Shown here piece by piece: positions 42,577 through 54,951 of a DNA stretch of 64,000 nucleotides. The notes below the pieces were generated by a model. The model saw only the letters and a list, made by a program, of their open reading frames with translations. It did not search any database and had not been told where the DNA came from. Each line of letters opens with the position of its first letter. Position 1 is the first letter of the stretch. Location of the stretch: positions 154,661 through 218,660 of the IMG/VR virus record IMGVR_UViG_3300046513_000348; one strand, 5' to 3'. The position numbers were made by a program, and so were the translations under genes.

Positions 42577-42654
42577 AATTACTCCAGTGTACGTTGTCAC
42601 AGGATCAAAAAAAAAGAGACATAGACATGCAGGGCCGAAGCCCTGCATGCTATT

Positions 42655-43378: not shown

Positions 43379-44261
43379 TTCGTTTTGGAAAGATAGATAC
43401 AACGTTTTGAATTGGCTGAGTCAAGTCGTAGTCCGACATATCGTGGAAGACCTTGTTCAGCATTTTGGCCGCCCAGTGATAAACACGGGTGGTTTTCTCC
43501 TCGACATAATCTCGAGGAATGAAGATGCCACAGTTTGCACTGATGGCCATCGCGCACTGCTTGTAAAAACTCACGTCCATGAGACCATCGTTCTTAGCCT
43601 GGTTCTCGGGATGAGGGAAGAACCCTTCCAATGAGGCCTGATGGATTCGGAAAAGAACCCGGTCCAGTTCAAGCTTATTGAAAAGCGTATCCGGAAGTAC
43701 CGACGTGTACGTTTCGTCCGTCTGGTACACTACCTTGTCACGCTGCGTCAGAACGCATGTGCAAAGAATGTCCAGTGTCTCGAGAGACTCGAAATTGAAA
43801 CGCTTGGGAATCGGAGTACCGAAATACATACTGCTTGCATTGAATGCCCAGATCACGGCGATCTTGTCCATCATCGCTTTCGTGGCATTGCTGATGCTTT
43901 CCTGGTTACGCTCCGAAGGGTTCGTCTGGAAATGAATGAGATTGGATCCCATCAAGTCCTTGATCTTCGGAACGGCCAAGAGTGTTTGCTCCAACTTCAG
44001 GAGCTGTCCAGGGAAATACGTTTCAGCGTATGCCTGGATGTCGGGACTGCCGAATGTGCGATGTTCGACGACCCCGTCATTGTTTTGTTTTACCGCCTCG
44101 AGTACAAGTGGTACAGTCTCAGTACCTCGTAACCACTCATGAACGCGAACGGCATTTTGTGTTGAATAAAACTTTCCAGCGTTGTCTTGAAGACAACCCT
44201 CCACGGAAGGAACACCATTTTCTTCTGCTCCGACATTAACCTGTAAACGTGTTGTGTGCAT
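43368..44261 (-). CDS. Hypothetical protein
   Basis: TAATG-coupled operon. Confidence 0.7.
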   Translation of the reverse strand: MHTTRLQVNVGAEENGVPSVEGCLQDNAGKFYSTQNAVRVHEWLRGTETVPLVLEAVKQNNDGVVEHRTFGSPDIQAYAETYFPGQLLKLEQTLLAVPKIKDLMGSNLIHFQTNPSERNQESISNATKAMMDKIAVIWAFNASSMYFGTPIPKRFNFESLETLDILCTCVLTQRDKVVYQTDETYTSVLPDTLFNKLELDRVLFRIHQASLEGFFPHPENQAKNDGLMDVSFYKQCAMAISANCGIFIPRDYVEEKTTRVYHWAAKMLNKVFHDMSDYDLTQPIQNVVSIFPKRNAN

Positions 44262-44794
44262 TAATAGCTCCGAATACGCGGACGCTGAAGCCCGCCAGTG
44301 TTTTGAGGAAGGTCAATCGGGTCATCGATATGCCGTTCCGTAATTTCAACCTTGAAGCTGAAAGTACCGACTCGACGGACATCTGGAATGGCCGTGACAT
44401 CGGTCTCGAAGTCTGGATCTTCTTTCCAGCCGCGAGGAAATCTTGTTTCAGGCAGGTAGTACCCGTTGGCGGTCATCGCCGACATCACCTCCCGCCCAAT
44501 CAACAGTATCAGATCGGCTAATCTGTTTTTATCCGAATGACTGAGGTAGAACTTGCCAATGCCCAGATCGTTGTACATTCCGTACGCAAGATCGTTCAGG
44601 TTGTCTTCACATATCGAGTAGCTGCGCGGGTACATCACGCAAGCCGTAAATACTTGTTCCATGAAGTCCTGGAATCCCAGAGTCTTCAGGAATCTGAAGT
44701 ATTCCCAATAGGGAGCCTCATTGGCCTTTTTCATTTCGTCTTCGAATGCATCGAAGGCGCGTCTAAGACTGATAAGGAAAGTTAACTTTTCCAT
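44261..44794 (-). CDS. Hypothetical protein
   Basis: TAATG-coupled operon. Confidence 0.7.
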   Translation of the reverse strand: MEKLTFLISLRRAFDAFEDEMKKANEAPYWEYFRFLKTLGFQDFMEQVFTACVMYPRSYSICEDNLNDLAYGMYNDLGIGKFYLSHSDKNRLADLILLIGREVMSAMTANGYYLPETRFPRGWKEDPDFETDVTAIPDVRRVGTFSFKVEITERHIDDPIDLPQNTGGLQRPRIRSY

Positions 44795-45228
44795 TACTCC
44801 CTCGTCGACGGTCTAACCACAATTGCGAAGTTGTTGCTCGAAACGCGGATGACCTTTGGTTGGTCCCTGTAGTAGGATCTACAGAAATTGTAAAAGCCTG
44901 TATCCAAGAAGAGCTCCGATAGAGTCTCACAGATCGAATACAGAATAGAGTGGATTTTCAAATACGAATCTTCACTCTCGATAATCGAACGCCCAAGAAT
45001 CCCTCTGTCGCAGAGTAGATCTATGAGGTAATCCATTTCATTGAGGCGGCTATAAATCGCACCTGGACCAGTATCGAGAGGTTCTTCATCTTCAGTTAAG
45101 AAGCGAACAATCTCATTCAAAAGCTTTTCCAGGTCAGTGTCCTGAAATACGCCCGACGGATCATTCCTCCTCAGATAACGTTCGAAGTTGAAGATGATGC
45201 CAAAACGGTATCTCATAACTGGACTCAT
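44794..45228 (-). CDS. Hypothetical protein, possibly leaderless
   Basis: ATG embedded in TTTTACAATG directly after a terminator. Confidence 0.65.
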   Translation of the reverse strand: MSPVMRYRFGIIFNFERYLRRNDPSGVFQDTDLEKLLNEIVRFLTEDEEPLDTGPGAIYSRLNEMDYLIDLLCDRGILGRSIIESEDSYLKIHSILYSICETLSELFLDTGFYNFCRSYYRDQPKVIRVSSNNFAIVVRPSTRE

Positions 45229-45239
45229 TGTAAAAGGGA

Positions 45240-45336
45240 AAACCCAGCTAGGCCCGAAGGCCTAGCTGGGCATGATGCAGTTAATGACGGCTCGAATAAT
45301 CATTAACCACGACCTAGGGAGGATTAGGTCATAGCA
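45240..45336 (-). ncRNA. Candidate early small RNA with three hairpins and a CCUCCC loop
   Basis: Early-promoter motif at 45337-45353; hairpins at 45309-45332 and 45280-45307; terminator at 45243-45270 plus T-tract; no sizeable ORF. Confidence 0.45.
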
Positions 45337-45353
45337 ATGATATATCGATGAAA
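45337..45353 (-). promoter_or_regulatory. Putative early promoter
   Basis: Minus strand TTTCATCGATATATCAT. Confidence 0.6.
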
Positions 45354-45357
45354 CTGT

Positions 45358-46656
45358 TTACACCGCAGCGCGAGGATAGACGATCTTCGGATGGGATGCG
45401 TAGTGAACCACCAGCTGTTTGTGGTCGAAGTCCTCGAGGTTCTTAAGTTCCTGTACCACTTCCACACAGCACGGCGCCATCGGCGTGCGTTCCAGTTGTT
45501 CCTTCACCTTCTCGACCTGGTTCGAGTAGATGTGGTGGTCACCCATCAGGTGGGTGTATTCCCACGGCACCATGTTGCACATCGAGGCCAGCAGGTGGGT
45601 CAGCAGCGAGTACATGCCGACGTTGAAGACGGTGCCGAGTGGGACGTCTTGCGAACGAGCGAAGCACAGCAGCGACAGGGCGCGAGTCGGCAGGTCCTTT
45701 TCCTTGTGGATCGCGAGAAGCTTCTTGCCTTCTTCCGTGATGTTGAAGGCGTAGTCGGCCACGATGTCGTAAGGCTTCTTGGTCGGGTTGCGCTGCATGT
45801 CCTGCCAGGACATCGGGATCGGATGTGCCGATTCGACCCAGCCCATGTTGTTCATCCAGACGTTGGCGAACGCCACGATCTGTTTGTTCAGCTCCATGCA
45901 GGACATGCCGTTCTCGGCGTTGATCAGTTCTTTGACCTTCGTCTGGAAACCGATGTGGCTGTAAGCCCACTGACGCAGGATTTCCATCTCGGTCATGTCG
46001 TGGGATTCAACCTGCCAGGTCGAGTGGCATGGCGCCAGTGCCATCTTGCCGTTGTCGGCGTTTTCCTTCGGCGACATGGAAAGATCCGGCAGCAAGCCGG
46101 CGTGCCAGACGTTCACGACCAGGCGACGCGAGTCCGGGTTGTTGCGCAGTTCATCGGCGATGTATTGCAGCTGGTCGACACCACCGCGGCCGCCGTCCTG
46201 GTACAGCTTGGTCTTTTCCTTGACGAAGGCCTTGACTGCTTCGATGGCGGCGCTGATGCTGATGTAGTCTTCTCCGCTGACTGCATCCGACAGGATTTTG
46301 TTCAGACGCTCTTCGTCTTCGCCGGCAATCTCGCGAACTGCCGCGCCGAAGTTACGCCACTGCTCGCCATACATCGGGCCGATGGTACCGGACTTGTCGC
46401 CAGCCCATGCATTCCAGATGCCGTTCTTGCGTTCCTTCAGCCACTGGACCGAGACGATGCCTTTGAGCATCCACTCCAGTTCCGACGAGACTTTCTCGTG
46501 GTCCACTTCACGAGTAGTCGGGATCGGCCAGAAGCCATGTTGCAGCGAGAACTTCATCATGCCGCCGAAATCCGAAATCGTGCCAGTGCCAGTACGGTCA
46601 CCTTTAACACGACCATTGTCCAGCAGATGCCGCATCAGGTCTTGATGTTGTTTCAT
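45358..46656 (-). CDS. thyA: Thymidylate synthase with insertions
   Basis: DRTGTGT, IWNAW, GPMYGEQWR, PDSRR, MALAPCH, RSQDVPLG..FN and DHHIYSNQ motifs. Confidence 0.96.
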   Translation of the reverse strand: MKQHQDLMRHLLDNGRVKGDRTGTGTISDFGGMMKFSLQHGFWPIPTTREVDHEKVSSELEWMLKGIVSVQWLKERKNGIWNAWAGDKSGTIGPMYGEQWRNFGAAVREIAGEDEERLNKILSDAVSGEDYISISAAIEAVKAFVKEKTKLYQDGGRGGVDQLQYIADELRNNPDSRRLVVNVWHAGLLPDLSMSPKENADNGKMALAPCHSTWQVESHDMTEMEILRQWAYSHIGFQTKVKELINAENGMSCMELNKQIVAFANVWMNNMGWVESAHPIPMSWQDMQRNPTKKPYDIVADYAFNITEEGKKLLAIHKEKDLPTRALSLLCFARSQDVPLGTVFNVGMYSLLTHLLASMCNMVPWEYTHLMGDHHIYSNQVEKVKEQLERTPMAPCCVEVVQELKNLEDFDHKQLVVHYASHPKIVYPRAAV

Positions 46657-46713
46657 GTTTTCCTCAATGAAAGACGAAAAAAAAATGTTACCACTAACTA
46701 ATCGTTGCTTGCG

Positions 46714-47170: not shown

Positions 47171-47191
47171 GTAATATATAGCTGTTGAAAT
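47171..47191 (-). promoter_or_regulatory. Putative early promoter
   Basis: Exact TATATTAC with upstream TTTCA on the minus strand. Confidence 0.65.
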
Positions 47192-54524: not shown

Positions 54525-54631
54525 ATACTCCGTCCTAAGGAAGGTTGAACAAAAAAATAATGCCCCGCTCAAACGATTAATCCGCAAAATATTATCTAGG
54601 GCCGAAGCCCTAGATAATACCCTTGCTGAGA

Positions 54632-54951
54632 TTACAACTGACGAGTGGCTTTCGCCAGGCCATCGTAAGAATAGACATGGCTGATCACAATACCAGCCAT
54701 ACCGGCGTGGTAGTAGAGTTCCTGCATCAGATACAGATCGAACTTCGGAGGAACCGTGAAGCCCTTGAAGAAGAAGGTGATGTTGATCGGATTGTTGCGG
54801 CCTTCCTTAACCCAGGTGCCGACGATTTGACCGTGCTCACCATGACCAGCTGCTTCCCTGCCGAACAGGATCTCGTATTGGTGCTGTGGACGCATGCCGC
54901 CATTAACGATCCAATCGATTAGGTTACGCAGGGCGATGTTCAGTTGTTTCA
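54632..54951 (-). CDS. Hypothetical protein
   Basis: GGAG Shine-Dalgarno before MKQL; start position approximate. Confidence 0.55.

What the first reader, a model, noticed from the sequence alone, without database searches (positions are those of the whole stretch)
45240..45353. Candidate stand-alone early small RNA presenting an anti-Shine-Dalgarno loop (AUCCUCCC)
Seen: an early-promoter motif (TTTCA..ATATATCAT) sits just after the thyA stop. It is followed on the minus strand by hairpin 1 ATGACCTA-ATCCTCCC-TAGGTCGT, hairpin 2 GTTAATGA..TCATTAAC, and a strong UUCG-loop terminator with T-tract, about 90 nt with no sizeable ORF. Established: C-rich CCUCC loops in bacterial sRNAs (S. aureus RNAIII/RsaE, alphaproteobacterial cuckoo RNAs) pair with ribosome-binding sites. 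Inference: a virion-RNAP-made sRNA that could silence Shine-Dalgarno-led mRNAs early in infection. Notably, the gene immediately downstream looks leaderless.
Basis: partly seen in the sequence, partly recalled or inferred. Interest (0 to 1): 0.75.

Follow-up and report, generated by a model that had tools for sequence, protein, structure and literature searches.

The report
Conserved early jumbo-phage small RNA unit
Right after the thymidylate synthase gene of an uncultured phiKZ-like jumbo phage sits a conserved promoter, three-hairpin, terminator unit that should produce a non-coding RNA of about 92 nt early in infection; its first loop could pair with ribosome-binding sites, but that role is untested.

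Summary
On the minus strand, a recurrent phage promoter motif (window 45368-45329) overlaps the thyA stop codon. It is followed by stem-loop 1 with an 8-nt loop AUCCUCCC, stem-loop 2, and a 13-bp UUCG-loop terminator with a U-tract. There is no conserved ORF.

The motif occurs 23 times in the 218.7-kb genome, always on the coding strand, including upstream of the RNAP beta and beta-prime-like genes. It recurs in RSL2 and RSF1. The likely start is G45330, giving an RNA of about 92 nt.

The same order, promoter then structured RNA then terminator then the same downstream gene, is kept in four lineages: the window clade, Chiangmaivirus, L031 and L032. Stems show compensatory changes. The region is single-copy and matches no Rfam family. 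It is the only one of the 23 promoters with a strong terminator inside its leader.

The pyrimidine-rich loop, with a CCUC core, is kept in two lineages and absent in two.

Best reading: a short early transcription unit nested between thyA and the next operon. It is both a 3'UTR/5'-leader-derived small RNA and an attenuator. Trans-acting anti-Shine-Dalgarno silencing stays plausible but unproven, and no RNA data could be obtained. The "leaderless" remark is unsupported.

The parts
45358..46656 (-). thyA (thymidylate synthase, 432 aa). Its stop codon at 45360-45358 lies inside the upstream part of the promoter.
45329..45368 (-). Early-type phage promoter: TGTAAA (about -30), TTTCA (45353-45349), ATATATCAT (45345-45337) and a conserved TGA (45331-45329) at the predicted start.
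   Evidence: The matrix score is 40 bits, in the top 6 of 23 genome sites, all on the coding strand. There are 8 sites in the window against 0.06 expected. The motif is kept in all relatives and recurs 8-9 times in RSL2 and RSF1.
45239..45330 (-). Predicted primary transcript of about 92 nt, from G45330 to the U-tract.
   Evidence: Start inferred from the conserved TGA and the -10 rule (PMC7598289). The fold is -48.2 kcal/mol with three hairpins. The covariance model finds it once in the genome. No Rfam match.
45311..45330 (-). Stem-loop 1: a 6-bp stem GACCUA/UAGGUC at the very 5' end, with the 8-nt loop AUCCUCCC (45324-45317).
   Evidence: The stem changes C-G to U-A in L028, L029 and L030, and the loop stays all-pyrimidine with CCUC. 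The loop's unpaired probability is 1.0.
45277..45310 (-). Stem-loop 2: 11-12 bp, with the 10-nt loop UAUUCGAGCC.
   Evidence: RNAalifold finds only wobble-preserving one-sided changes. The loop core UCGAGCC is invariant in 5 sequences.
45242..45271 (-). Intrinsic terminator hairpin, 13 bp with a UUCG loop, followed by UUU at 45241-45239. It is also the first terminator after thyA.
   Evidence: Two pairs show compensatory changes in the window clade. A terminator sits at the same place in all relatives.
45227..45235 (-). TTTTACAAT element between the terminator and the next start codon.
   Evidence: TTTTACAA occurs 23 times on the coding strand against 4 on the other. It lies 9-24 nt upstream of ATGs, and 8 copies are in early leaders. 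It is also found in RSL2 and RSF1. Its function is unknown.
44797..45216 (-). g1, a 140-aa protein of unknown function and the first gene of a five-gene operon that runs to the terminator near 42650. The alternative start at 45228 is not conserved.
   Evidence: relatives start at the second ATG. No Pfam or PHROG hit. Operon end.

Best explanation
This is a short early transcription unit nested between thyA and the next operon of a phiKZ-like jumbo phage.

How it is laid out:
- A phage-specific early-type promoter overlaps the thyA stop codon.
- Transcription starts at about G45330.
- The nascent RNA folds into a 5'-terminal stem-loop with a pyrimidine-rich loop, a second stem-loop, and a strong intrinsic terminator.
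- Most transcripts therefore end after about 92 nt.

What it does:
- The short RNA is the main product.
- Read-through of the same terminator supplies mRNA for g1 and the four genes after it, so the terminator works as an attenuator.
- The same terminator also closes the thyA operon.

The element is thus at once like a type I 3'UTR-derived small RNA (own promoter, terminator shared with the upstream mRNA) and like the 5'UTR premature-termination RNAs seen in phiKZ and 201phi2-1.

Shown here: the promoter motif and its recurrence; structure conservation and covariation; single copy; non-coding nature; linkage to g1.

Inferred: the start site, which polymerase acts, the termination efficiency, and any trans activity of the loop.
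For: - Promoter. There are 23 coding-strand sites in the genome and this one is in the top six. Eight lie in the window against 0.06 expected. Sites lie directly upstream of the RNAP beta-like and beta-prime-like ORFs, as expected for early genes. The same motif recurs in RSL2 and RSF1.
- Order of elements. 7 of 23 promoters have a strong GC hairpin 14-38 nt upstream (terminator then promoter). Only this one has a strong terminator inside its leader.
- Conservation. The order promoter, structured RNA, terminator, g1 is kept in the window clade, six Chiangmaivirus phages, L031 and L032.
- Covariation. 13 of 55 pairs have compensatory changes in Chiangmaivirus, and the stem-loop 1 inner stem shows several pair types per position, up to three at one pair, below an invariant loop. 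Three pairs have compensatory changes in the window clade.
- Constraint. RNA-region identity to relatives is 81-85%, against 67-80% for the adjacent coding DNA.
- Linkage. L029 keeps the unit and g1 although the upstream gene is an I-TevI-like endonuclease rather than thyA.
- No other early-type promoter lies before g1 and the four genes after it; the next strong terminator is near 42650.
- Precedent. phiKZ and 201phi2-1 produce abundant RNAs under 250 nt by 5'UTR premature termination, with some read-through (PMC10914365, PMC11512511).
Against: - There are no transcript data. Only DNA metagenome runs hold the sequence, and no RNA run was listed for it or for RSL2.
- The start site and the polymerase are assigned by analogy. 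RSL2 and RSF1 need host RNAP (PMC5468394).
- The U-tract directly after the stem is short (UUUU, then CCC) and is degenerate in L030, so termination efficiency is uncertain.
- Middle or late promoters of this phage group are unknown. g1 might have its own promoter, and the unit would then be purely stand-alone.
- Sequence, as opposed to architecture, is poorly conserved between lineages.
Confidence: 0.55

Rival explanations
1. One reading: the short RNA acts in trans. Its exposed CU-rich loop pairs with Shine-Dalgarno sequences of host mRNAs, or some phage mRNAs, early in infection and blocks their translation.
For: - The loop is fully single-stranded.
- It stays pyrimidine-only with a CCUC core while the closing stem covaries, in the window clade (AUCCUCCC, UCCCCUC, CUCCUCC, UCCCUCC) and in Chiangmaivirus (UCUCCUC invariant).
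- Chiangmaivirus also carries an invariant CAUCUCC internal loop.
- Duplexes with GGAGG-type sites are about -8 kcal/mol and reach -15 for a full match.
- Only 4 of about 212 crude phage gene starts have GGAGG upstream, so phage mRNAs would largely escape.
Against: - L031 and L032 keep promoter, hairpins and terminator but have no CU-rich loop.
- No phage ribosome-binding site has extended complementarity.
- The best phage match, the g2 site GAGGGAG, is absent in Chiangmaivirus g2.
- A 5-6-nt seed matches almost any Shine-Dalgarno sequence, so specificity is undefined.
- The host is unknown, there are no expression data, and there is no other such loop elsewhere in the genome.
Confidence: 0.2
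2. It is a purely cis-acting regulated leader, either a ligand- or protein-sensing attenuator or a put-like antitermination RNA. Stem-loops 1 and 2 would decide whether the terminator is read through into g1.
For: - The order promoter, structured leader, terminator, gene is the classic attenuator layout.
- This is the only early-type promoter available for the five-gene operon starting at g1.
- TTTTACAAT precedes the g1 start as in other early leaders.
- The stem-loop 2 loop core is invariant in the clade.
Against: - No convincing alternative antiterminator pairing was found by inspection.
- No sequence core is shared across the four lineages, as an aptamer would require.
- No Rfam riboswitch or leader matches.
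- L032 has a much shorter leader.
Confidence: 0.12
3. It is only the thyA 3'UTR with its terminator. The promoter-like motif would be inactive or coincidental.
For: The terminator is the first one after thyA, so thyA transcripts must contain this sequence.
Against: - The promoter match is among the best in the genome.
- It is kept in every relative, down to about 50% thyA protein identity.
- L029 retains the ATATAT element, the TGA, the RNA and g1 with a different upstream gene.
- Elsewhere in this genome, terminators precede promoters.
Confidence: 0.08
4. It encodes a micro-protein: the 13-codon ORF inside stem-loop 2, or a plus-strand ORF led by GGGAGG.
For: An ATG or GTG-started 13-codon frame exists in 4 of 5 clade members. 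On the plus strand, GGGAGG precedes short ATG frames.
Against: - Substitutions show no third-position bias.
- L029 has a 2-nt deletion that shifts the frame.
- Chiangmaivirus, L031 and L032 have no equivalent ORF.
- The plus-strand frames run for 4 or 32 codons, the longer one antisense to the thyA 3' end, and are not conserved.
Confidence: 0.03

Closest known systems
5'UTR premature-termination short RNAs of jumbo phages: phiKZ P112/T102 (71 nt upstream of PHIKZ221), the 141-nt RNA upstream of PHIKZ302, and the 201phi2-1 sRNAs (PMC10914365, PMC11512511)
   Same: The phage group is phiKZ-like. A phage promoter is followed within 250 nt by a terminator upstream of a gene. The expected products are a short RNA plus minor read-through. 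Function is unknown in those cases too.
   Different: No sequence or Rfam relationship. This unit is predicted, not observed. It uses an early-type promoter overlapping the stop codon of the upstream gene, and it carries a conserved CU-rich 5' loop.
Type I 3'UTR-derived bacterial sRNAs, with their own promoter near the end of a gene and a terminator shared with the mRNA, such as DapZ and MicL (from general knowledge of the class)
   Same: The promoter sits at the stop codon of thyA. The small RNA shares the thyA terminator. A seed-like single-stranded region lies near the 5' end.
   Different: It is a phage promoter, and Hfq dependence is unknown. The terminator also sits 25 nt before the next gene, so the unit doubles as a leader.
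C-rich-loop sRNAs that pair with Shine-Dalgarno sequences: RsaE/RoxS, RNAIII, and the CcsR 'cuckoo' RNAs
   Same: An unpaired pyrimidine-rich motif (CCUCC or CUCCUC) sits in a hairpin loop. In Chiangmaivirus a second CU-rich internal loop is present.
   Different: No homology: Rfam finds nothing even at E = 10. The window RNA has one motif only. No target is known. The motif is absent from two related lineages.
phiKZ-type early promoters (AT-rich motif centred near -10; PMC7598289, PMC8244752)
   Same: A roughly 10-nt AT-rich core, further conserved blocks upstream, strict strand bias, and location before early operons including the RNAP subunit genes.
   Different: The consensus is specific to this lineage (TTTCA, N3, ATATATTAC, N5, TGA). 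Use by the virion RNAP is untested, and the cultured relatives are rifampicin-sensitive.

Membership tests
phiKZ-like early (virion-RNAP) promoters | A conserved AT-rich motif of about 10 nt centred near -10, recurring upstream of early operons on the coding strand | tested here: met
   23 sites, all on the coding strand. 8 in the window against 0.06 expected. Also present in RSL2 and RSF1.
phiKZ-like early (virion-RNAP) promoters | Precedes the non-virion RNAP subunit genes and other early genes | tested here: met
   The sites at G000 41819 and 54014 lie directly upstream of ORFs carrying the Rpb2_6 and Rpb1_2 domains.
phiKZ-like early (virion-RNAP) promoters | Transcribed by the injected virion RNAP, independently of host RNAP and of protein synthesis | not testable with these tools
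   No RNA data. RSL2 and RSF1 are rifampicin-sensitive (PMC5468394).
Promoter-proximal (5'UTR) premature-termination short RNAs of jumbo phages | A start site followed within 250 nt by a termination site upstream of the gene | tested here: met
   At the sequence level only: the predicted start at 45330 and the terminator at 45271-45242, 25 nt before the g1 ATG.
Promoter-proximal (5'UTR) premature-termination short RNAs of jumbo phages | The short species is observed as a primary transcript by cappable-seq or Northern blot | not testable with these tools
   Only DNA runs hold the locus.
Type I 3'UTR-derived sRNA | Own promoter at or near the end of the upstream gene, with the terminator shared with that mRNA | tested here: met
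   The promoter overlaps the thyA stop. The next terminator upstream is at 47249-47218, before the thyA operon promoter.
C-rich-loop anti-Shine-Dalgarno sRNAs (RsaE, RNAIII, CcsR) | An unpaired C/U-rich motif complementary to GGAG/GAGG in a hairpin loop | tested here: met
   Loop AUCCUCCC, unpaired probability 1.0. Conserved in two lineages.
C-rich-loop anti-Shine-Dalgarno sRNAs (RsaE, RNAIII, CcsR) | Sequence and structure homology to the described families | tested here: not met
   No Rfam hit at gathering score. At E up to 10 there are only chance-level matches to unrelated families.
C-rich-loop anti-Shine-Dalgarno sRNAs (RsaE, RNAIII, CcsR) | Demonstrable pairing with the ribosome-binding sites of defined targets | tested here: inconclusive
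   No extended phage targets. The g2 match does not co-vary across clades. The host is unknown.
Riboswitch or ligand-sensing leader | A conserved aptamer core across lineages, with an alternative antiterminator | tested here: not met
   Only the architecture is conserved between lineages. No Rfam cis-regulatory match.

The most novel reading that the evidence does not exclude
A lytic jumbo phage fires, from one of its first promoters, a dedicated RNA of about 92 nt. Its 5'-terminal loop mimics the 16S anti-Shine-Dalgarno sequence. It preferentially masks strong GGAGG-type host ribosome-binding sites, while the phage's own mRNAs, which mostly carry weak or short sites, escape. That would be an RNA-based host translation shut-off.
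Probability: 0.12. Interest if true: 0.8.

Novelty: new member of a known kind. Interest (0 to 1): 0.5.

Why it matters
Small RNAs of virulent phages are only beginning to be catalogued, and almost none has a known function. This candidate is conserved and supported by covariation, and it has a defined promoter, a defined end and a testable seed. Its homologues occur in cultured phages of Ralstonia and Burkholderia glumae (RSL2, RSF1, FLC8, SURPRISE13), so transcription, termination efficiency and loop function can be tested directly. The locus also yields the early-promoter consensus and the terminator rules for this little-studied branch of phiKZ-like phages.

Tried and rejected
- Rfam at gathering score over the whole window, and at E up to 10 over the locus and its FLC8 homologue, found nothing meaningful. 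ARAGORN found no tRNA or tmRNA.
- Megablast and blastn of the locus against phage records gave no DNA-level match to the intergenic region.
- A pattern scan of IMG/VR returned only RSF1 and RSL2. The metagenome pattern scan gave 16 unrelated chance hits. A protein-profile scan of IMG/VR with g1 again returned only RSF1 and RSL2.
- RNA evidence: only DNA metagenome runs hold the window. Read laying showed relatives about 92% identical but no RNA. No RNA run was listed for the RSL2 homologue.
- Paralogues: the covariance model finds the unit once in the genome. The hit at 54580-54659 is just another UUCG terminator.
- 5'-terminal hairpins are not a general feature of early transcripts: 10 of 23 have one, against 27% of controls, so this does not explain stem-loop 1.
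- CU-rich loops are not enriched elsewhere in the genome: 17 on the coding strand against 13 on the other.
- Cis pairing of the loop with the g1 or thyA ribosome-binding sites: no complementarity. The g2 site matches in the window clade only.
- The micro-ORF and the plus-strand ORF were rejected.
- g1 function: no Pfam, PHROG or Atlas lead.
- An antiterminator pairing between the 3' side of stem-loop 1 and the terminator was examined by eye. It is weak and not conserved.

Full report
**Context.** The window is the last 64 kb of a 218,660-bp IMG/VR virus record, about 97% complete, assembled from a rhizosphere metagenome. Its nearest cultured relatives are the phiKZ-like Chiangmaivirus jumbo phages of Ralstonia and Burkholderia: RSL2, RSF1, FLC8, FLC4-4C, RsoM3USA and SURPRISE13. 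thyA is about 50% identical to theirs at the protein level, and the next gene (g1) is 40-47% identical. The genome encodes split RNAP beta-like and beta-prime-like proteins.

**The observation.** On the minus strand the thyA stop codon (45360-45358) is followed by these elements:
- TTTCA at 45353-45349 and ATATATCAT at 45345-45337;
- a hairpin with the loop AUCCUCCC;
- a second hairpin at 45310-45277;
- a 13-bp GC-rich hairpin with a UUCG loop and a T-tract at 45271-45239.

The stretch folds far better than shuffles, with z = -9.3. An independent scan calls the terminator. No ORF longer than 13 codons is present. The description is therefore accurate.

**The promoter is real and recurrent.**
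- The motif with up to 2 mismatches occurs 8 times in the window, all on the minus strand, against 0.06 expected.
- A 45-nt weight matrix finds 23 sites in the genome, all on the coding strand. Shuffled genomes give about one low-scoring hit. The thyA-proximal site scores 40 bits and is among the six best.
- The consensus is an A/T-rich T(A/G)TAAA block, then TTTCA, N3, ATATAT(T/C)A(C/T), N5, TGA.
- Sites sit immediately upstream of the RNAP beta-like and beta-prime-like ORFs. This fits the phiKZ scheme, in which non-virion RNAP genes are early.
- RSL2 and RSF1 carry the same motif 8-9 times, again only on the coding strand, with none in the control.
- Jumbo-phage early motifs are centred near -10 (PMC7598289). 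The invariant TGA therefore marks the likely start, at about G45330.
- Assignment to the virion RNAP is by analogy only. RSL2 and RSF1 are rifampicin-sensitive (PMC5468394).

**Anatomy of the RNA.** From G45330 the transcript folds as follows, at -48 kcal/mol in total:
- stem-loop 1, 6 bp with an 8-nt loop, beginning at +1;
- stem-loop 2, 12 bp with a 10-nt loop;
- a 5-nt linker;
- the terminator.

The stem-loop 1 loop is unpaired with probability 1.0.

**Relatives and covariation.** Homologues of g1 led to Logan contigs that span a gradient of divergence:

| Locus | g1 protein identity to the window |
|---|---|
| L026 / L027 | 99% |
| L028 | 81% |
| L029 | 73% |
| L030 | 71% |
| L031 | 57% |
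| L032 | 51% |

- All of these, and the six Chiangmaivirus phages, keep the same order: promoter at the stop codon, a 5' hairpin beginning at the start G, a middle domain, a strong terminator (mostly UUCG-capped), and then g1 within 15-30 nt.
- In the window clade, the stem-loop 1 stem changes GACCUA/UAGGUC to GAUCUAG/CUAGAUC. Stem-loop 2 changes only through wobble pairs. The terminator has compensatory pairs.
- In Chiangmaivirus, 13 of 55 predicted pairs show double-sided changes. The inner stem of stem-loop 1 shows several pair types per position, up to three at one pair, beneath an invariant loop.
- The RNA region is as conserved as the flanking coding DNA or more so: 81-85% against 67-80%.
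- The covariance model finds a single copy in the genome and only weak hits across lineages. Architecture, rather than sequence, is what is shared.
- Rfam has no matching family.

**The loop.** The loop sequences are AUCCUCCC in the window and L026, UCCCCUC in L028, CUCCUCC in L029 and UCCCUCC in L030. Chiangmaivirus phages have UCUCCUC plus an invariant CAUCUCC internal loop. All of these contain CCUC and are complementary to 5-6 nt of AGGAGG. L031 keeps the first ten nucleotides of the RNA but has a stem extension in place of the loop, and L032 has a different short hairpin. Neither has a CU-rich loop. The motif is therefore selected within two lineages, but it is not essential to the unit.

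**Stand-alone RNA, leader, or 3'UTR?** Three facts bear on this.
- In this genome the normal order is terminator then promoter: 7 of 23 promoters have a strong hairpin 14-38 nt upstream. Only this promoter has a strong terminator inside its leader. The reversed order is conserved in all relatives, which argues that the short RNA, or regulated termination, is the point of the arrangement.
- L029 keeps the unit and g1, but its upstream gene is an I-TevI-like endonuclease rather than thyA. The unit therefore travels with g1 and is not merely a thyA 3'UTR.
- No other early-type promoter precedes g1 and the four genes after it, which run to a terminator near 42650. The terminator is also the first one after thyA, whose own promoter and upstream terminator lie at 47187 and 47249-47218.

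The most economical reading is a nested unit. The short RNA is the major product, read-through feeds the g1 operon, and the terminator is shared with thyA. This matches what cappable-seq shows experimentally in phiKZ, where more than 90% of transcripts stop at T102 to give a 71-nt RNA, and in 201phi2-1 (PMC10914365, PMC11512511). It also matches the layout of type I 3'UTR-derived sRNAs.

**Test of the anti-Shine-Dalgarno idea.**
- Pairing energies are ordinary for a ribosome-binding-site interaction: about -8 kcal/mol with GGAGG and -15 with a full 8-nt match.
- No phage gene start is preceded by GGGAGG.
- Among about 212 crude gene starts only 4 have GGAGG upstream. Phage mRNAs would therefore be poor targets, which is compatible with a host-directed role but does not prove one.
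- The best in-operon match, the g2 site GAGGGAG, is missing in Chiangmaivirus.
- There is no family of such loops in the genome.
- With no host and no RNA data, the model can be neither supported nor excluded. I give it about 0.2.

The 'leaderless' remark is unsupported. Between the U-tract and the conserved start codon (the second ATG, 45216-45214, which aligns with the relatives' start) lie 25 nt, including a perfectly conserved UGAGUCCAGUUAUG and the recurrent TTTTACAAT element. phiKZ itself showed no leaderless mRNAs (PMC8244752).

**Verdict.** This is a real, conserved, non-coding early transcription unit, and a new RNA family of a kind already seen in jumbo phages. The trans-acting anti-Shine-Dalgarno function is an attractive but untested minority hypothesis.

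Noticed in passing
Whole genome; window 45227-45235, 41343, 40763, 39177, 32985, 30621, 11147, 8443 (minus strand): TTTTACAA(T) occurs 23 times on the coding strand against 4 on the other. It lies 9-24 nt upstream of start codons, often just after a hairpin, and 8 copies are in early-promoter leaders. It is also enriched on the coding strand of RSL2 and RSF1. It may be a promoter, a terminator flank or a translation enhancer; which one is unknown.
   Followed up: partly
Whole genome, for example window 48693, 41487, 30696, 23242, 12413, 4717 (minus strand): Most strong GC-rich tetraloop hairpins on the coding strand are followed within a few nt by YTTATG(Y), often with a T-run further on. This parallels the phiKZ terminator motif (hairpin plus TTAT) and contains the phiKZ late-promoter TATG (PMC10914365, PMC7598289).
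   Followed up: partly
L029:1-351: In one relative, the gene directly upstream of the RNA unit is not thyA. It is an ORF with an I-TevI DNA-binding domain, a free-standing homing endonuclease. It ends 14 nt before the ATATAT element and replaces the TTTCA block.
   Followed up: partly
window 45361-46656 (minus strand): thyA is 432 aa, against about 264-320 aa for solved thymidylate synthases. It has insertions of roughly 45 aa (about residues 107-156) and 110 aa (about residues 216-325) between conserved blocks. Chiangmaivirus phages share this long form.
   Followed up: no
window 47164-47100 (minus strand): The leader of the weaker early-type promoter at 47187, which drives the 128-aa ORF and thyA, also contains a hairpin followed by CTTAT and a T9 run before the start codon. 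This is a second possible promoter-proximal termination signal.
   Followed up: no
window 45289-45298 (minus strand) and homologues: The stem-loop 2 loop core UUCGAGC(C) is invariant in the window clade. In L030 it is closed by G-C, like a tRNA T-loop (G-UUCGAGC-C). ARAGORN finds no tRNA-like gene here.
   Followed up: no
window 44200-46700: Closely related phages, about 92% identical over this stretch, are present in other rhizosphere and soil metagenome runs, including a 40-kb contig. This phage lineage therefore recurs in plant-associated soils.
   Followed up: partly
window 45391-46701 (plus strand): A 436-aa open frame lies antisense to thyA. Similar long shadow ORFs occur opposite most large genes in the window. 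They were taken as compositional artefacts of the roughly 53% GC coding strand and were not examined.
   Followed up: no
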